Below are positions 8,917-61,700 of a stretch of 64,000 nucleotides of DNA, in pieces. Under the pieces are notes generated by a model. That model was given only the letters and a program-made list of their open reading frames with translations, did no database searches and was not told the DNA's origin. The position numbers and the translations under genes are program-made. Source of the stretch: Saccostrea cucullata. Taxonomy: Eukaryota. The DNA lies in the NCBI RefSeq assembly GCF_032062105.1, contig NW_026930396.1, positions 186,001-250,000 of the forward strand. Direction: 5' to 3'. Within the stretch, counting starts at the first letter, position 1, and each line of letters begins with the position of its first letter.

Positions 8917-10270
8917 TTCAATTCATTTATTGACAACACCATCATACATTGGCATATAGTCATGAATACAACAATTAACATACATAAAATAAAATATCAA
9001 AGAAAGCATATCAGGTTTGTTGAAGGTTTTCTTTCCTAATATCAAAGCACTTTTTCAAAAAGTTACAAACTCTCCTAGCAGTTCTAATACTTGTAGGATT
9101 GATAATGTCAATAATAGGGTTTTCCTTCATGTAACATTGTGCATTGAATATATCGTAATATTGTAATCTACATTGATCATAACTAGGACAATAAAGTACA
9201 AAATGGTTTTCATTTTCAATAAAAAATTTACAAAAATGACATACACGTTTTTCTCTAGGAATAGGTGGCCTTGAGTATCTCCCCATTTCAATATGTAGAG
9301 TATGAGCACTAATTCTTAGTTTTGTTAGGATTGTCCTTTCAGATTTCTTCAATGGTAATTCTAGATAGTCTTGTAATTTATATTCATTTAAATCAATTAT
9401 ATTACTATAAAAAGTTAATTTCCCAGAATTTGATTTAGAAATGTTCTTTAATTGTTCACTGATCTTGATTCTATAATGTTCATCTAATTTATATTTAAAA
9501 GTTTTATGTGATATGTCCAATGAGGGTAAAGACAATTTCTGTTGTAGAGTATAAAGCTTTCTTTGCCAAGATATTCTAGATCCCAGTGTTTTATCTTCCT
9601 TAAATGCAGACACCACTAACTGGTCATTATAATCATTTTCTCTCTCTAAGTTTTTCAGTCTTAAATAAAATTTATACATATTTTCATAACACAAATAAAA
9701 TAGTGGGAACTGTCCCAACTCATATAGAACAGCAATATTAGATGATTTTCTATGAACACCTAAAATGTCTTTAAAAATCTGGTGTTGTATTTTTTCAAAT
9801 GGAAAGTGATCTGAGGATAATAAATCACATTTGTAGTCTGCTATCCAGATTTCAGAACCATAAGTTAAGATTGGAGTAATCATAGATCTATAAAGTTTAA
9901 GCATTGTCTTTACAGAAAAATTTGTATTAGCTGGAAAATTGGTTTTTATAGCATAATAAGCTTTTCTAGCTCTTTCTGACAGTTGTTCTGCTGAGAATTT
10001 CATTTTTCCATCAGATTTAAACACCAGTCCTAAATATTTATACTGATTTGTTATTTCTATACGGCTATGATTATAGTAAAACCAATACTCATTTTCACAA
10101 TTTGTACTTTGAGAAAAAATCATAATATTTGTTTTTTCCATGTTCACACACAATTTCCAATCATGACAATATTTACCTAAAATATCTATACATTTCTGTA
10201 AACCACTAGGTGTCTCAGATACAAGAATAAGATCATCAGCAAAAAACATGTTGTTAATAGGCATTAACTC
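8917..10270 (-). mobile_element. 5'-truncated non-LTR retrotransposon (LINE, RTE-X-like) with an open RT C-terminal ORF
   Basis: The 417-aa ORF (10264-9011) begins at the RT FFADD motif and has YKYLG, PILTYGSEIW and the C-terminal LRISAH..GRY..CxxC..ENENHF..C zinc motif. There is an AATAAA plus a (TGAAT)-type tail. Candidate TSD TACAATA at 8910-8916 and 10271-10277. Confidence 0.88.
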
Positions 10271-33460: not shown

Positions 33461-34749
33461 CAATTAAATAGCTTGAAGCATTAGCTGGACTATCGTATGT
33501 GCATAACACTATTCGAGAGAAGTTCGGAAAGATCAAGGTCATTTGCAATTAGAATGAACGCTAGGTTGGTGTTTTACATATGTAGTCAGTCGTGTTTTTC
33601 GTACATCTTGTCTCATGGTAAAATGTTATAGTTATGGCAAACCAATGATGACAATAATTCAAACATTGTTTTTTTTTTTACTCAAGAACTCGAGAATTTC
33701 AGAATGACTTTTTCATTATTCATATCAAAAACATGTTTTACAGGTTTGAAAACAGGACTGCTTTTTAAAAAATGTGAAAAAATTCTTAGAATTTTTAGAA
33801 AAAATCTTTTGTAAACATATTAGTCAGTTGATTTCCTATAAATGATTTTTAACCAATATGTTTTTTTCTTGTATTCTTGTGAGACAAATACGATAACCTT
33901 TCTAGGCCTTACATACGGACGCTATATTCGGTAATTGATAATTATAACCTTTGATCGTCATTTTTTTTTTTTTTCTTTTTTTTTTTTTGACAAGCTTACC
34001 TTTGATGAGAAACATTCCTGGTCATAAAAGTTCATATATATATTCATTCTTTTCCTTTCGATTTTACTATCTTTTTATTTCTAAATAGTTAACTAGCTTG
34101 GTCCAAGTTAATTATGATTTTTTTCTTTTGTTAGTGAAAAGACTGCTTGTTTCGAATGTTAATAATTCTAATTAAGAAAACTAAAAATTGTTAATGTATT
34201 CAAATAATGTGCAGCTCGGGTTGTGATTAAAAAACATGCAACCTTCATAAATTGTAGATTAGATTTATAGCAGTGTTGTAGCTCTTTTATGAAATTAGAA
34301 TTGAAGGCAAGCAAAATTTATATTAACGTCGATTTTGAATGATTATTTTCGATATTAGGATTGTGGTCTCGCTTGCATTGTTAAGCGCAATTACCTAAAA
34401 TTAACGCATTATATGTTGTTCAAAGAACATTTATAAAGAACATTTATAAATAACAAGTTTCTGATCCCACAAGTATGCAAATTAGACAAAGACACGTCAT
34501 ATATTTTACCTCCCGAGTGATTTGTAGGGAGAGAATACCGGCATTATAAATTGAAATAATTTCATTGTTTTTACAGATTTTCATACGTAAGGGAACGGAA
34601 CTCCTCGGCATTGATACACTAATTGTGATAGATTGTTTGTTCCGTAACACGCCCTTTTTTACCAAGACAGGTTTAATTATTCGCTTGCCAGTAATACACA
34701 TTGCACGACCTAATTCATTACGTGTGTAAAATATCATGAAATTGAGTGG

Positions 34750-35593
34750 TATATAGGAATTAATGAGGAGTTCTTGTTTGGAAAGATACTTGGAATAATG
34801 TATCGTTGGTGTTCGAGAGAACTTAATGACGGTTCCTATACTATATTACATTGATTATATAAACGTATTAAAGAATGTGTTAATATTAACAGGTAAGTTA
34901 CATATATTAATCAATCTTACTTTTTCCATCTAAATCTATTATTGAATATATACATTAACTAATTTTGATAATTTGACAATGATCAATACTAGTATGTTGC
35001 ATGTGTACTAAGAGGTCCTAGATATACAGTTATACTCGTGTATTTATCAATCTCTTGTATCGTATTCATAATCTTTAATCAGAGAGAGAGAGAGAGAGAA
35101 AGAGATCAATGACTGGGACTGGAAATAAGTTCATCGCTCCAGCAGACTAGAACTTTAACAACCGGTTGATGTCAAGTTCATCACCGATTGCTTTAAAGCA
35201 CAATATGTTTTAATATAATTAAGTGATGTCTACTTTCTCTGATTAAAACAATAGATCACACAAATTGAGAAAAATCATGCAAATAAGTATATACTATATG
35301 AGCAATTTCATTTTTTACGTATTTCTAACCTAGATATACACGGCAAATTGAATATTCAAAATGTTCTCCGCAACTATTTTTCGACAGAGAAATATACCGA
35401 AACATACTTTTTTTTCCTCTGCAGTTTCATGGTTCTAATGTAATGAATAAAAAAAACCTTGAAATTTTGGATTGTAGTTTGGCATTGACGAGAGCTCGAT
35501 ATCAAACATATTCTCCTTTGCAGCTCATTGTTAATGGTTCTCTTTTATTTTTCAGAATGTTTTGAATTGGAAGAACTGATTTTTTAAAAAAAA
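34750..35593 (+). promoter_or_regulatory. Putative TATA-like box, non-coding first exon and 5'UTR intron of the glycosyltransferase gene
   Basis: TATATAG at 34750. Consensus donor CAG|GTAAGT at 34892/34893. Polypyrimidine acceptor TCTTTTATTTTTCAG ending at 35555, 38 nt before the ATG. Inferred without transcript data. Confidence 0.5.
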
Positions 35594-37582
35594 ATGAAGA
35601 GGAACAAAAGAGTGTTTATATTCTTTGGAATTTGGATTTTACTTGCCTTCATCGCCATCTTATTAAACGTGTTAAACGTGGATTGGACCAAAACAAACTA
35701 CATAAACGCCATATTCATCATTGTAGTACTGGGTGTTTTACAGGGAAGCGTCATGGAATTCCCCATGCAAACTGTGGCTACATTATTGATAGGTGGAGAA
35801 ACTCGAGACCCACAGAGAGCCAAGTGTGACAGGTTCACTATTCTTTTGAATTACAATCTTCTTGCTCTAAGTAAAGACGAAATTGACGATTGTTTGGATA
35901 ATATGTTCCAAGCTTTTATGGGGAACCTAAGTCATAATGTCTCCGCAGTCCTTGTTAGTGCAACTGGGGCACAAGAACTTAAAGACTATGAAATAGAAGT
36001 TGTACAAAAATACAGATCCCTCATATATGATCACTTATTCCAGGAAGGAGTATCCTTTGCTGAAGAGGATTTTGATTCAATCAATCCTGCACATTTGGAA
36101 CATTTGTGGAAATTATACGAAGATGTGGAGAAATCTGTCTTTATTACAGAGTACTTGCATGATATTTGTGATCGCTTTGCGCGTGAATTTATGGTTATAC
36201 ATCGTGTCAGTCGCGTGTTACGCAAGTGTGGACAGTACCAAGACTTAATGCTTCTATCGGAAGGGGATGACCTGGCTTTTACATACTGCGACAAGGAATT
36301 TTATGGTAGGGATGCTAGACCCTACTCCGAGCCTTTATTCCACGATTCAGAAGACGTGAACAACATTTTTGGTAGAAAGTTTGACTATACTTTAGTGTTG
36401 GACGGTGATACTGGTGTACCAGATGGGTGTGTTTATGAGTTATTGTCCATTGCTGCAGCAAATCCTGAGCGAGGAATCATACAACCTGCCATCAAGCTAT
36501 ATTGCAATGACACAGACACAATTTTCATGCACATAGAAGCAATGAGACAATCTATCTATGAACCCATGACAAATGCAGTGATGGCTTTGCTTGGTCAATC
36601 AGCTTACTTTGGGAAGGCAATGATAAAGAATAAAATATACATAGAGAGAGTGATTGGGACAAGAGAGAATCTAATAGAACGAGTTCCTGTCGATGTTTTG
36701 AGTCATGACACTTTTGAGGCAGCATTGTTGCAACCTTTGTATGCGGGTTCGGCATATCTTCTAGAAGCACCTTCTTTTAATTTTGTTACATGGAACATTA
36801 GAGAAAGACGCTGGAATCGAGGAGAAGTGCTTTTAGCGATGTATTTTTGGAAAAATGCTGTGGGGAGGCTTATGAGATGGATTCAAAAGCAAATGAAAGG
36901 AGATAAGTTTAACCCTACAAAACTTCGTACAGAATCTCATCTCGATTTTGTGAGCAGTTTTATTGCCTATGCCGCCCTTAGACAGATGATGATGAAACCA
37001 TTCTTACTATTTTATGTTCTTATTCACATTAGTGTACATCTTCGATACAGATACGCTTCAATCATAATAGTCATGTTTCTGGTTCTGGTATTTCCAAAAT
37101 TTGCAACGTGTAATAAGAAGAACTATAAATATGTCATTATTGAAACTATCGCATCTATTTTACAATTCACACCAGAGGCAATAGTGGGTTGTGTCCGATT
37201 TGTGAAAGCTGTACAAGCGAATCTTGGTGCTAATGTTAAATGGATTCCTCAGAGGGCGGTAGAAGACGAATTCAGAGCGTCCAATTGCTTTATATCCAGT
37301 CTCAAACATCTTTGGGGATATTCAGTTTTTGCTGTTGTTTGTAGTATAATTATTGCACTATTTGTGGAACAAGCCTTATTATTGTTGGTCATGTTTACCA
37401 CATTATTTTTTCTTCCACTTTACACGGGTGTAACGTCACTTCCTCTGAAAAAAGAGGAAGAACGCCATTTTTACAAAACTAATGTCGAAATTGCTACTGG
37501 TGCTGCACACACTCCTGGAATTTACAGATCAGTTAGAGATTCTGAATTTGTTAACAAAGGTGCAGATTTAGATACTGTGTGA
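35594..37582 (+). CDS. Membrane GT2 glycosyltransferase, OpgH/MdoH-like (glucan biosynthesis glucosyltransferase H; beta-1,2-glucan synthase-like), 662 aa
   Basis: Uninterrupted ORF with 2 N-terminal and several C-terminal hydrophobic helices. Motifs in order: RKCG, VLDGD (DxD), ANPERGIIQ, YFGK, VLSHDTFEAALL, RERRWNRG, WIPQR. These parallel OpgH RKxGN, VLDADS, ANPNAGIIQ, YWGHN, ILSHDFVEAAL, RDRRWCxG and W..QR as recalled. AATAAA at 37718. Confidence 0.85.
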   Translation: MKRNKRVFIFFGIWILLAFIAILLNVLNVDWTKTNYINAIFIIVVLGVLQGSVMEFPMQTVATLLIGGETRDPQRAKCDRFTILLNYNLLALSKDEIDDCLDNMFQAFMGNLSHNVSAVLVSATGAQELKDYEIEVVQKYRSLIYDHLFQEGVSFAEEDFDSINPAHLEHLWKLYEDVEKSVFITEYLHDICDRFAREFMVIHRVSRVLRKCGQYQDLMLLSEGDDLAFTYCDKEFYGRDARPYSEPLFHDSEDVNNIFGRKFDYTLVLDGDTGVPDGCVYELLSIAAANPERGIIQPAIKLYCNDTDTIFMHIEAMRQSIYEPMTNAVMALLGQSAYFGKAMIKNKIYIERVIGTRENLIERVPVDVLSHDTFEAALLQPLYAGSAYLLEAPSFNFVTWNIRERRWNRGEVLLAMYFWKNAVGRLMRWIQKQMKGDKFNPTKLRTESHLDFVSSFIAYAALRQMMMKPFLLFYVLIHISVHLRYRYASIIIVMFLVLVFPKFATCNKKNYKYVIIETIASILQFTPEAIVGCVRFVKAVQANLGANVKWIPQRAVEDEFRASNCFISSLKHLWGYSVFAVVCSIIIALFVEQALLLLVMFTTLFFLPLYTGVTSLPLKKEEERHFYKTNVEIATGAAHTPGIYRSVRDSEFVNKGADLDTV

Positions 37583-37764
37583 TTATTTTATTATACATGT
37601 ATTTCATTACGTTCATTTATGAATATTCATACATCTTTGCCTTCTGTGAGTAATATTTTACTTTTTAAAACAACTTAAAATGTAATTTGTTAACTGTTAG
37701 TATTTTGTGCATAACAAAATAAATGTATTTTAATAGTGTCGTTTTTTTAATTTCTTATTTTTGA

Positions 37765-55572: not shown

Positions 55573-56118
55573 TCACAAAACCACACAACGACAGCATTTT
55601 GCCTTTTCCTTCACTGGACTAGTGTTCATTTCTCGGACAATTTCTATAAAGATCTCATTCACATTTTGAGTAATTTTAGCGGAGGTTTCCAGAAATGGAC
55701 ATCCCCACATTTGTCCCAGAGCCTCCCCCTCTGAACGTGGTACTTCACGTTGATGATCCAGATCTGCTTTGTTTCCAACTAATATCATGGGTATATTTTC
55801 AATTCCTTTGACACGAATGATTTGTTCTTTCATAGTTTTTATGTCTTGGAACGTTTGAAGACTTGTTATACTATAAACAATGACGAAACCTTGTCCATTT
55901 TTAATGTACAGATCTCTCATGGAGGCAAACTGCTCGGTACCAGCAGTGTCTAAGATTTCTAACACAGACGGAGCAGAATCGACCTCTATCTCCTTTCTGT
56001 AAAAGTCTTCGATCGTTGGGTCATATTTTTCCATGAAAGTCCCGGATACAAACTTCACTGTAAGGGCACTCTTACCAACACCACCACTTCCCAGAACTAC
56101 AACTTTGTACTCCCGCAT
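55573..56118 (-). CDS. RAP2: Ras-related protein Rap-2 (intronless CDS, 181 aa)
   Basis: [20 protein letters not shown], effector [11 protein letters not shown] (Rap2-specific F), [31 protein letters not shown], and C-terminal CCRCVVL CAAX. Confidence 0.97.
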
Positions 56119-58710: not shown

Positions 58711-61700
58711 ATGGTTGTAGAGTGTGTGCACTTGGAGGCCGATGCCTATATGGTGTGTTTAACACATGCATTATCGACAGAAAGAGAAGAAGTAATGGGA
58801 TTACTCATAGGGGAGGTAATATTACTAAATGGCGCAGTGACCCAGTTTCTCTCTCAGCTGATCAGCTGGAAGCCGGTCAAGCGTGGAAAATATATACATT
58901 AATTAAGAAGAAAAGCGCCTAAACTCATACTGTTTAAGCAAAATACTTTACATATAAATTTCTTTAAGTATGCCATTTGACATATCAAGCTTCTCGTTGT
59001 TTAATTTAAGAAGGCAAACAGGTATCATGTTAAAACATGAAGAAAGACATGCATGTTTCATGTTATTAAAGCTTTTTTCTGTAGGCCTAATGCATTCTTT
59101 TAGGTTGATGAAAATCGTGCCCTACACATATACTCTGTTATCATGTTAAGGAGATCTGACAAACAACCGGACAGAGTGGAAATCTCCCCGGAGCAACTCT
59201 CGGACGCCTCCAGCAAAGCAGAGGTAATTCTTATCTTTCAGAATAATCAAGACAGTTCATTCTTTGGTAAAAAGAGGGTCATTAGGAGATATGTAATTTG
59301 GTGTTTATCCGAGAATTCTTATGAGAGGTAATACTGCAGGGCTCTCGATTCTCTAAAATTGGGGCCGTTCAACGGCCCCGTTCCCAATGCAAAAAAGGTA
59401 CCTTTTTTCCCAAAAGAAAGGTGTAAATTTCCCAATTTCCATCCAGAGTAAAATATTAATTAAAAAATAAAAGTCCATCAAACCTAATCGCAAAAAAAAA
59501 CCGCAAACAAAACACATTTGCAAATGAAAGTGAAACTGTACTACTATTTTATTTGTTCGCGCCAAATGCATTCGTAAACTGGTTCGGGGAACCAGGTTAT
59601 TGTTTTTACAAAAATGTACAACTATAGTGCAGAGTATCTTGTTAATTTAGACAAAAACCAGCATTTTGGTTTCAAAAATAGACATTTCATTTAAATATTA
59701 GTAAGCTGCACCTAGAAACATACCCGCGCTTCATTTTCAGTCTGCTGTAGGTAAGCAGAGTTGCCCATGTGATCGAGGAAATTCGGGACTATGTGACTAG
59801 CGACTGTCACGCAGTAAGACATATAACCGCAATATCAACACTCAAAGATAGTAATGACAAAGCTAAATATGTGCTTTCATAAATAGCCTACGTACCCATG
59901 TTTGTTCTTTTTAACTGTTTATTCAAACCAGAGTTAGCATTGATAATAAAATGCAATGAATTTGTGTTGTCCAACTTTTCCCAAAATGACGATAATTTTC
60001 CCAATTTGAACGGCCCCGGCCCCAGTCCCAAAAAGTGGTGTGAGAGCCCTGTACTGTTGCTATAGCAGTATAGTTGATTATAGAATAATCTGTCTGTGTA
60101 ATAGGACAGGCTGTCATCAACTTTAAGGTCGATGCATGAATGAAATCATATCAGTTTTAAATTTAAGTTTGCCAATTTATATAACAAGCTAACAATCCAT
60201 CCACCATCACTCTCAATCTATGCAAAAGACATCGGACTTGACCAGTGTGCAGTGCCTCTGGTTCGATGCAACATTTTTTATGGAATGTCTGCATGACTCT
60301 CAGTCTTGAAGGCAGTGTCTGGTTTTGAGCTTTACTTTTTTGACGCAGAGTCATTAAAAGGTTTGGAAAATATTACACAAATCCAAGTACGATGGACCGT
60401 CTACATTTGAATACTTTGCTAGAGAAGAATAAAATATCAATTATAATATTACATGTACTAGTACATGTTTAATAATTAAGTTGTCCTTGGTTCCGCATTT
60501 TCACATGTTTTTCTTTTTTACATAAGTATTTCTTGGTCTTACAAAAAATGGGTTTGGCCTTTTGTGTTCATTCATTACAACAGACCTGATGTTCTATGTT
60601 ATCCAAAAACTTCTGCATACTAGACAGCACTCAGTTAACTAGATCCACATTAAGCCACCTTCCTGGCCTTAATCCTGGAAGTCTGGAACCTTTCACTGTG
60701 CCAGAGTGATTCTCTCAGCTTACCGGTAGTCTACAGTCAATGGACAAAAGTATTTGTCATTTTCAAAATGGCGTCTTAGTTTATGTTCACAACAGGTGTT
60801 TTAAACGGGAAGATTTGTATACTTAAAATTGAAGTTACTTACCTAATATTTGGTCAGATTTCCTTTCATACGGATTACTTCTTTAATCCGGTCTGGAATG
60901 GATGCGTAGAGGCTGTGGACGTATTCCAAGGGGATATTTTCCCCCACTTGTCTAATTGCTTTAAACAGCTGAACATGACTTTCAATAGTTGCAGACATGC
61001 CTTTAAGCTCTGTTTTGATCTTCAACCAATTTTTTCAATCACATTTAAATCTGGAGACTGAGCTGGCCAATCTGTGCAGTAAATATTATTTTCGGTCATG
61101 TAGTTTTTCACTACAAGAGCCCTATGTACGGGGGCATTATTGTCTTGGAAAACATAGTCTTTGTTCGGAAAATGTCTGGCAATTAGAGGCCATGAATTAT
61201 TGTCAACTATTTCCAAGTTGAGAGCATTTATATTACCTTCGACAGATACAATAGTTCCCATACCATCAAAACACATGCATCCCCAGATCATAAGTGTTAC
61301 CCTCCTTTTCGATGGCAGACAAATCAAATGGGGACTGTTCGCTTCGGCGTCCTTTCTCCATACATATACGTGGTTATCTGTCCTGATAACAATCTGACTC
61401 TCATTGCAAAATGTATATTTTTTCCATTCTTTATCACTTTTCCAGTTTTTTCGTTCTCGACACCATTTTAACCGCTTTTTTCTGTTCACACGTCAAACCA
61501 CCATAGTTTTCCTTGCACGTTTCCTTTTGTACCCTTCTTCACATAATTTTCTAAATACTGTTTTTTCACTAAATTGTCTTCCTCTTCCTTCATTCAGTTT
61601 GTTAAATCTGTCAAAGTGTCCCTTCTGTTTGCCTTAGCGAGACGACTCAACTTCGTCTTGTCCCGAGTTGTAATCAAAAGTCAACGGCCAGATCTTGGCA

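What the first reader, a model, noticed from the sequence alone, without database searches (positions are those of the whole stretch)
35594..37582. Bacterial-type beta-1,2-glucan synthase (OpgH/Cgs-like GT) encoded in an animal genome
Seen: an intact 662-aa multi-TM ORF with the ordered motifs RKCGQYQDL (about 36221), VLDGDT (about 36394), ANPERGIIQ, YFGK, VPVDVLSHDTFEAALL (about 36695), RERRWNRGE (about 36799) and WIPQR. Established: processive GT2-fold synthases use D, DxD, a catalytic-base motif and QxxRW. The LSHD..E plus RxRRW/RxHRW variant characterises bacterial OpgH/MdoH (osmoregulated periplasmic glucans) and cyclic beta-1,2-glucan synthase Cgs/NdvB. It differs from animal chitin synthase (GEDR/QRRRW), hyaluronan synthase and tunicate cellulose synthase (TED/QxxRW). 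The protein mixes OpgH-like features (ANP..GIIQ, EAAL, W..QR) with Cgs-like ones (F.GK, VP..LSHD.FE, RW.RG[DE]). Inference: a horizontally acquired enzyme that lets a mollusc make beta-1,2-glucan or a related polymer. I know of no established biosynthesis of it in animals. Possible roles are osmotic adaptation, mucus or shell matrix, or microbe interaction.
Basis: partly seen in the sequence, partly recalled or inferred. Interest (0 to 1): 0.92.

Follow-up and report, generated by a model that had tools for sequence, protein, structure and literature searches.

The report
Oyster gene for bacterial-type glucan synthase
Oysters and most other molluscs, acorn worms and a ribbon worm carry an old, spliced and conserved gene for a membrane sugar-polymerising enzyme whose only studied relatives are the bacterial beta-1,2-glucan synthases, which suggests these animals make a polysaccharide not yet described in them.

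Summary
The ORF and motifs are real. It is a single-copy, spliced (5'-UTR intron 34893-35555), expressed Saccostrea oyster gene under purifying selection, not contamination. [quoted passage not shown] It is a member of neither. It belongs to an unstudied third branch (K[CP]GQYQD...DxD...SHD...RW) found across bivalves, gastropods and cephalopods, in hemichordates, a nemertean, probable diatoms, dinoflagellates (inserted into ABCC exporters) and giant viruses. No member of its subfamily was found in 185,579 prokaryotic genomes, and trees reject a direct bacteria-to-animal transfer. The metal, catalytic-base and acceptor residues are kept, but the first UDP-binding Asp (Cgs D527) is Ala, and the Cgs primer Tyr, cyclase and phosphorylase are absent. 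Best reading: an active synthase of a linear beta-glucan, most likely beta-1,2 (about 0.45); donor and linkage are unproven. NCBI already auto-names some orthologues 'OpgH-like'; I found no paper on them. The scan had noted this same stretch once (s1-725461), not on other DNA.

The parts
34579..34892 (+). 5'-UTR exon (true start not determined; 34579 is where the RNA contig piece begins)
   Evidence: table 8: run X2 record 9 covers 34579-34885; donor CAG|GTAAGT
34893..35555 (+). 663-nt GT..AG intron in the 5' UTR
   Evidence: one contig joins 34885 to 35589 with 41 letters between (7+33 expected), no depth at 34964-35554; ends GT/AG
35594..37582 (+). single-exon CDS, 662-aa OpgH/Cgs(GT84)-like membrane glycosyltransferase
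35618..35755 (+). N-terminal transmembrane helices 1-2 (aa 9-54)
   Evidence: hydropathy; AF2 helices H3-28, H36-53
35957..35965 (+). S122-A123-T124: place of the first GT2 Asp (Cgs D527, OpgH 'LSD'), here Ala
   Evidence: A in 80/88 family rows, never D
36221..36247 (+). RKCGQYQDL, family signature; K211 aligns with the KxG Lys of OpgH (KSGN) and Cgs (KRGK)
   Evidence: K211 invariant
36395..36412 (+). DxD metal/UDP motif D270/D272 (= Cgs D624/D626)
   Evidence: PMC10901819
36683..36730 (+). SHD motif with putative catalytic base D372 (= Cgs D739)
   Evidence: PMC10901819
36800..36826 (+). RERRW acceptor motif, R406-W407 (= Cgs R773-W774), R409 (= Cgs R776)
36977..37435 (+). C-terminal membrane part: TM3-4 (about aa 462-506), interface helix and WIPQR gating-loop region (aa 511-562), TM5-6 (about aa 572-614)
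   Evidence: AF2 secondary structure, hydropathy; TM count of six is inferred
37718..37723 (+). AATAAA, likely polyadenylation signal
   Evidence: RNA contig piece reaches 37595; cleavage site not shown

Best explanation
An active, membrane-embedded, inverting processive glycosyltransferase of a third branch of the OpgH/Cgs superfamily. A cytosolic GT-A domain sits under about six TM helices. It binds a nucleotide-sugar (most likely UDP-glucose) and a divalent metal through K211, D270/D272 and R406; D372 activates the acceptor hydroxyl and W407 stacks the terminal sugar. It repeatedly adds glucose to give a linear beta-glucan, most likely beta-1,2 as in both studied relatives. There is no cyclase, no phosphorylase and no primer Tyr, so the product should be linear and primed otherwise (de novo or on a lipid). 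It leaves either through the TM bundle (OpgH-like) or via a separate ABC exporter, as the dinoflagellate ABCC fusions suggest. Likely use: a secreted mucus or matrix glycan, or osmotic/microbe-facing glycan. Shown: gene, splicing, expression, conservation, fold, residue mapping, distribution. Inferred: activity, donor, linkage, export, role. The gene has passed vertically through molluscs; animals most likely got it early from another eukaryote or via giant viruses, not straight from bacteria.
For: AF2 model pLDDT 94. Best PDB match Cgs 8RF9: Foldseek E 4e-16, TM 0.62; VIA Z 23.6 over 515 residues vs BcsA 18.1, HAS 16.3. Profile hits only Cgs in PDB sequences. hhalign 98.4% to E. coli OpgH, 97.7% to a Cgs-type GT domain. 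Atlas TM 0.71-0.74 to OpgH/Cgs-like clusters. K211, D270, R406 invariant and D272, D372, W407 in 86-87 of 88 rows spanning 24-79% identity. 16 of 17 listed congener differences in the CDS are synonymous. Both characterised relatives make beta-1,2-glucan (PMC10901819, PMC11842490). Dinoflagellate copies lie between the halves of an ABCC/MRP transporter, paralleling Cgs plus its ABC exporter.
Against: Only 23-29% local identity to OpgH and far below NCBIfam cut-offs (47 vs 419 bits); linkage often changes across such distances in GT2 enzymes (own knowledge). The first UDP-coordinating Asp is Ala in the family. No GH144, OpgG/OpgD or GH94 partner found in the genome (exon-wise search, GH162 not testable). 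No report of beta-1,2-glucan in animals was found. Expression was low in the two raw-read runs (depth 0-5).
Confidence: 0.45

Rival explanations
1. Active processive synthase, but of another polymer: a beta-glucan with 1,3 or 1,4 linkage, or another sugar from another nucleotide donor (the base pocket has lost its Asp). It could be the unknown maker of the sulfated beta-glucans reported from gastropod mucus glands (charonin sulfate, Buccinum hypobranchial glucan sulfate; recalled from memory, not verified here).
For: First Asp replaced in all three subfamilies of this branch; long branches to OpgH and Cgs; no beta-1,2-glucanase partner found; one Batillaria gene model is fused to a GH128 beta-1,3-glucanase domain, though this may be a model artefact.
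Against: SHD/RW motifs, N-terminal helix pattern and TM layout match the two beta-1,2 synthases better than any cellulose, hyaluronan, chitin or FKS synthase. The mucus glucan papers could not be retrieved.
Confidence: 0.3
2. A non-processive or short-chain glycosyltransferase that glycosylates a lipid or small molecule, whose product is then exported by an ABCC/MRP-type pump.
For: The fused transporter in dinoflagellates is ABCC/MRP-type, a class that exports conjugates, not a bacterial Cgt/NdvA. Weak GT21 hits in sister-subfamily proteins. Cgs's compact TM bundle has no export channel (PMC10901819).
Against: Full RW acceptor motif, interface helices and gating-loop region of polymer synthases are conserved. 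Tandem 2-3 GT units per fusion suit chain building.
Confidence: 0.15
3. A catalytically weak or dead pseudo-enzyme retained as a sugar-nucleotide sensor or scaffold (E. coli OpgH has a moonlighting role in cell division).
For: Loss of the first Asp; a few paralogues have lost catalytic residues (P0040 SHE, P0075, third unit of P0190); PMC11389396 notes the enzyme-independent role of E. coli OpgH.
Against: DxD, catalytic Asp, Lys and RW are near-invariant over animals, protists and viruses, which is not the pattern of a dead site.
Confidence: 0.07
4. On origin only: direct bacterium-to-mollusc transfer, or bacterial contamination of the assembly.
For: CDS has no intron; all named relatives with known function are bacterial; rare bacteria carry a sister subfamily.
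Against: Spliced UTR intron; GC3 0.35 like neighbouring host genes; animal neighbours; orthologues across Mollusca following the species tree; no GTDB member of the subfamily; AU p 2e-37 (with bacterial sister subfamily), 0.001 (OpgH), 0.0009 (Cgs).
Confidence: 0.03

Closest known systems
[quoted passage not shown]
   Same: Closest solved fold (Z 23.6, model 1-630 on chain 402-993); compact TM bundle; DxD, SHD catalytic Asp, RW and second Arg, F.GKG motif, similar helix after strand 1.
   Different: Stand-alone 662-aa protein without NTD, GH189/GH144-like cyclase or GH94 phosphorylase; D527 is Ala; the primer Tyr694 loop insertion is absent; 15% structural identity; AU rejects a clade with Cgs.
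OpgH/MdoH (GT2, linear beta-1,2-glucan backbone of osmoregulated periplasmic glucans)
   Same: Stand-alone membrane synthase of similar size and layout; ANP..GIIQ, SHD..EA, RW, W..QR; hhalign 98.4%; NCBI auto-names several mollusc orthologues 'glucans biosynthesis glucosyltransferase H-like'.
   Different: Scores far under NCBIfam cut-offs; KCGQYQD instead of KSGN; PIC/PxY.ED motif and the LSD Asp absent; GKG instead of WGHN; no opgG/opgD partner; AU rejects a clade with OpgH.
Horizontally derived animal polysaccharide synthases: tunicate cellulose synthase (CesA), and chlorovirus hyaluronan/chitin synthases as a virus precedent
   Same: A microbial-type processive GT2-fold synthase domesticated in an animal lineage; relatives also in giant viruses.
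   Different: Different GT branch (Z 18 to BcsA vs 23.6 to Cgs); spread over at least three phyla; nearest relatives are protists and viruses, not bacteria. The tunicate case is from own knowledge.

Membership tests
GT2-fold processive membrane synthases (superfamily) | GT-A domain docked under a TM bundle with interface helices | tested here: met
   AF2 model and fold searches
GT2-fold processive membrane synthases (superfamily) | DxD, catalytic Asp and (Q/R)xxRW | tested here: met
   D270/D272, D372, RERRW 403-407
GT2-fold processive membrane synthases (superfamily) | First Asp after strand 2 that coordinates UDP | tested here: not met
   A123; never Asp in 88 rows; Cgs D527 (PMC10901819)
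OpgH/MdoH | Score above a curated MdoH model cut-off | tested here: not met
   best 47 bits vs 419
OpgH/MdoH | KxGN, LSD and WGHN motifs | tested here: not met
   KCGQ, VSA, FGK
OpgH/MdoH | Branches with OpgH | tested here: not met
   AU p 0.0012; four OpgH references only
OpgH/MdoH | OpgG/OpgD partner in the genome | tested here: not met
   PF04349 not found, control rang in E. coli; exon-wise search, so absence is not proven
OpgH/MdoH | Makes linear beta-1,2-glucan from UDP-Glc | not testable with these tools
   needs biochemistry
Cgs (GT84) | GT84 domain fold with D624/D626, D739, R773 | tested here: met
Cgs (GT84) | Fused cyclase (GH189) and GH94 phosphorylase domains | tested here: not met
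   662-aa protein ends after the TM bundle; PF10091 and PF17167 not found in the genome
Cgs (GT84) | Autoglucosylated primer Tyr694 in the IF1h loop | tested here: not met
   three-residue insertion carrying the Tyr is absent; model has a continuous helix 310-333
Cgs (GT84) | Cyclic beta-1,2-glucan product | not testable with these tools
   not expected without a cyclase
Animal chitin / hyaluronan / tunicate cellulose synthases | GEDR or TED catalytic motif with QRRRW/QxxRW, and best structural match among these enzymes | tested here: not met
   SHD motif; chitin synthases TM 0.25-0.27, HAS 0.33-0.43, BcsA 0.38-0.47 vs Cgs 0.62

The most novel reading that the evidence does not exclude
Molluscs, hemichordates and nemerteans make beta-1,2-glucan, a polymer so far known as a bacterial product, with a conserved synthase from an undescribed eukaryote and giant-virus branch of the OpgH/Cgs superfamily; dinoflagellates have built it into single-chain synthase-ABC exporter machines. 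This would be a previously unrecognised animal (and marine-eukaryote) structural or mucus polysaccharide pathway over 500 million years old.
Probability: 0.4. Interest if true: 0.9.

Novelty: new variant of a known kind. Interest (0 to 1): 0.72.

Why it matters
Animals are thought to have few polysaccharide synthases (chitin, hyaluronan, glycogen, glycosaminoglycans, tunicate cellulose). A conserved extra synthase in a whole major phylum implies an uncharacterised glycan in oysters, mussels, scallops, snails and cephalopods. If it is beta-1,2-glucan, animals, microalgae and giant viruses become marine sources of it, which could explain the wide spread of beta-1,2-glucanases in marine bacteria (PMC12102758 notes such groups). 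Whatever the linkage, the single-copy, single-exon oyster CDS makes the question directly testable, and the branch offers a minimal Cgs-like enzyme with an altered donor pocket for mechanism studies.

Tried and rejected
Contamination: rejected (intron, host-like GC3, animal neighbours, orthologues in dozens of molluscs). Ordinary eukaryotic GT2 (chitin, HAS, CesA, FKS): rejected by fold ranking and motifs. Membership of OpgH or Cgs proper: rejected on cut-offs, motifs, domains and AU tests. Single-sequence PDB search gave only chance hits. Pfam gives only E 0.04. Partner enzymes PF10091, PF04349, PF17167 not found in the genome; PF11790 search uninformative (no control rang); no GH162 model available. 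Bacterial sister-subfamily loci L029/L031 and the viral locus L008 show no glucan-pathway neighbours among the genes scanned. The Polinton-like elements around homologue P0110 (L060) were considered as evidence of viral delivery and set aside: such elements are common in animal genomes, the gene there has its own intron, and AU rejects animals+NCLDV; they were only observed, and the two exons of that gene were not joined. Seven literature searches on this enzyme type found no paper on these animal proteins; the hemichordate genome paper's main text does not mention it and its supplement is not held. Old papers on gastropod mucus glucan sulfates could not be retrieved. The bootstrap ('careful') tree did not finish in two runs; only SH-aLRT trees are reported. 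L058 was a mis-trimmed 20% hit and was dropped from later trees; P0040, the third unit of P0190 and L050 were left out because they lack SHD.

Full report
Observation. Pfam sees only a weak GT2 group-2 match (E 0.04). NCBIfam gives eight MdoH models, best E 1e-12 over aa 259-410, but at 47 bits against a cut-off of 419.

It is a real oyster gene. The genome is 1.17 Gb and holds one copy. The protein clusters with Saccostrea echinata XP_061171787 (98% identical), so the host is a Saccostrea rock oyster. The window also holds a TRIM gene, a Ras-family GTPase, an LDL-receptor repeat exon and animal transposons. GC3 is 0.35 against 0.37-0.40 for two neighbours. A contig from a run of a related oyster (X2, record 9) joins 34579-34885 to 35589-36699 with 41 letters between, which fits a 663-nt GT..AG intron at 34893-35555 in the 5' UTR. 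Oligo-dT raw reads of two other runs cover the CDS thinly (depth 0-5) and not the intron. Of 17 listed differences inside the CDS, 16 are synonymous (the table was truncated, so this is a sample).

Distribution. Full-length homologues at 50-91% identity occur in oysters, pearl oysters, scallops, clams, unionids, abalone, limpets, caenogastropods and octopods, often with paralogues, and at 48-52% in three hemichordates. A divergent copy is in the nemertean Tubulanus (P0207). No named hit from annelids, arthropods, echinoderms, chordates or cnidarians was among those listed, but many hits carry no taxon name and the search is word-limited. Outside animals the same signature occurs in compact eukaryotic contigs that I read as diatoms from their gene content (not confirmed by a taxon label), in dinoflagellate transcriptomes (Gymnodinium smaydae, MMETSP), and in giant viruses (L008 with NCLDV capsid, topoisomerase and PCNA). 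A pattern scan of 185,579 prokaryotic genomes found no member of this subfamily (exact-pattern scan, so divergent members can be missed). A sister subfamily (KKPGQYQD) is in five bacterial MAGs (Elusimicrobia, Omnitrophota, Gammaproteobacteria) and in Noctiluca. A third, more distant one is in Tribonema and Ectocarpus.

Structure. AlphaFold2 on an 88-row alignment gave pLDDT 94, pTM 0.92: two N-terminal TM helices, a cytosolic GT-A domain, interface helices and four further membrane helices. The best solved match is the GT84 domain of Agrobacterium Cgs: Foldseek E 4e-16, TM 0.62; VIA Z 23.6, rmsd 4.0 over 515 residues, against 18.1 for BcsA and 16.3 for hyaluronan synthase. The family profile hits only Cgs among PDB sequences (E 4e-11). 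No OpgH entry appeared in the PDB searches, so the fold ranking cannot separate the two; by profile comparison they are about equal (98.4% E. coli OpgH, 97.7% Cgs-type), and predicted OpgH and Cgs-like models score TM 0.71-0.74.

Active site. Using the Cgs residues of PMC10901819: D624/D626 = D270/D272, catalytic base D739 = D372, R773 = R406, R776 = R409. K211, D270 and R406 are invariant; D272, D372 and W407 are kept in 86-87 of 88 rows. Two departures matter. First, D527, which coordinates UDP in Cgs and is kept in OpgH (LSD), is Ala123; it is never Asp in the family and is also non-Asp in both sister subfamilies. Second, the primer Tyr694 of Cgs lies in a three-residue insertion that the family lacks. 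The cyclase and phosphorylase domains are absent, and GH144, OpgG/OpgD and GH94 were not found in the genome (exon-wise search).

Domain fusions. In dinoflagellate-type proteins one to three copies of the whole synthase unit sit between the two halves of an ABCC/MRP transporter. The transporter is eukaryotic ABCC, not bacterial Cgt, so this is an independent coupling of synthesis to ATP-driven export. It suggests a cytosolic product needing an exporter, as for Cgs, whose TM bundle has no channel (PMC10901819). One related protein is fused to a formin FH2 domain. These are hints from other organisms; the oyster protein stands alone.

Phylogeny. Three trees (142 rows LG+G4; 56 rows LG+C20 PMSF; 29 rows; SH-aLRT only) agree. 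The oyster gene sits in a mollusc orthogroup that broadly follows the species tree (oysters with pearl oyster and scallop; Imparidentia; gastropods; cephalopods), so it was inherited vertically from a conchiferan ancestor at least. Mollusc and hemichordate copies group together (91-93, not starred) and then with the diatom-like and dinoflagellate copies (95-99). Giant-virus copies come next, then the bacterial/Noctiluca subfamily. OpgH and Cgs are long outgroup branches. AU tests reject animals+bacterial sister subfamily (p 2e-37), animals+OpgH (0.0012), animals+Cgs (0.0009) and animals+NCLDV (0.0014) (LG+G4, few outgroup rows, long branches). The nemertean copy and P0110 fall outside the main animal group on long branches, so one early gain with many losses and several transfers both remain open. 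Ultimate bacterial ancestry of the branch is likely; the immediate donor to animals was more likely a eukaryote or virus.

Mechanism. Shown: gene structure, expression, constraint, fold, residue equivalence, distribution. Inferred: a metal-dependent inverting synthase adding glucose from UDP-Glc at the cytosolic face, D372 as base, W407 holding the chain end, giving a linear beta-glucan, most likely beta-1,2 (0.45) because both studied relatives do so. Rivals: another linkage or donor (0.3), a lipid or small-molecule glycosyltransferase tied to ABCC export (0.15), a pseudo-enzyme (0.07). The role (mucus, matrix, osmotic or microbe-facing glycan) is a guess from the animals that carry it; I have no tissue data.

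Known or new. NCBI pipelines already label several orthologues 'glucans biosynthesis glucosyltransferase H-like', and the ESM Atlas has an unnamed mollusc-dominated cluster. I found no paper that describes them, and a 2025 paper still introduces beta-1,2-glucans as produced by bacteria (PMC12102758 abstract); the library lacks most subscription journals. The protein works like an OpgH/Cgs synthase but fails the membership tests for both, so I class it as a new variant of a known kind. Interest 0.72; 0.9 if beta-1,2-glucan synthesis in animals is shown.

Noticed in passing
P0190-P0196 (dinoflagellate-type proteins, 1439-3301 aa): One to three complete synthase units inserted between the two halves of an ABCC/MRP transporter; the third unit of P0190 has lost SHD. 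A striking synthase-exporter fusion in its own right.
   Followed up: partly
P0200 (1569 aa): Family member fused to a C-terminal formin FH2 domain, recalling cytoskeleton-linked chitin synthases; organism unknown.
   Followed up: no
L008:10001-11803, L012, L013: Giant-virus (NCLDV) genomes carry the synthase; L008 lies near capsid, DVNP and another GT2 gene.
   Followed up: partly
L015, L016/L027, L028-L031: Sister subfamily in rare bacteria (Elusimicrobia, Omnitrophota, Gammaproteobacteria MAGs), often fused behind a second GT2 domain or inside giant proteins of 1800-3300 aa.
   Followed up: partly
P0083 (Batillaria attramentaria model): Synthase fragment joined to a GH128-type domain (PF11790); may be a gene-model artefact or a neighbouring gene.
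   Followed up: no
P0026, P0036, P0047, P0056 and P0038, P0040, P0046, P0073: Locus tags suggest tandem expansions in the freshwater bivalves Sinanodonta (ACJMK2_005017-005022) and Dreissena (DPMN_165331-165335); one Dreissena copy has SHE instead of SHD. Could bear on an osmotic role.
   Followed up: no
L060:8045-11668: Homologue P0110 in an unidentified host has a coding intron and is flanked by Polinton-like elements (protein-primed polymerase B, DJR capsid, A32 ATPase).
   Followed up: partly
L002 and L005: Two similar copies of the locus in one metagenome, each beside a divergently transcribed 457-459-aa secreted protein with a GDPHF motif; looks like homoeologous loci of a diatom.
   Followed up: no
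window 41894-44113 (+): Single-ORF TRIM gene (RING, B-box, NHL), 739 aa.
   Followed up: no
window 55573-56118 (-): Single-ORF Ras-family GTPase, 181 aa.
   Followed up: no
window 25262-25702 (-): Exon with LDL-receptor class B repeats, part of an LRP-like gene noted earlier in s1-725430.
   Followed up: no
window 37769-39412 and 9011-10264: Degenerate retroelement pieces: two similar copies right behind the gene, heavily covered by repeat-derived RNA reads, and an RT ORF at 9011-10264.
   Followed up: no
window 45039-45405: Two tandem tRNA-like units (probably a tRNA-derived SINE) that account for the GC peak at 45-46 kb.
   Followed up: no
window 61022-61489 (-): DDE_3 transposase fragment (Tc1/mariner-like).
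   Followed up: no
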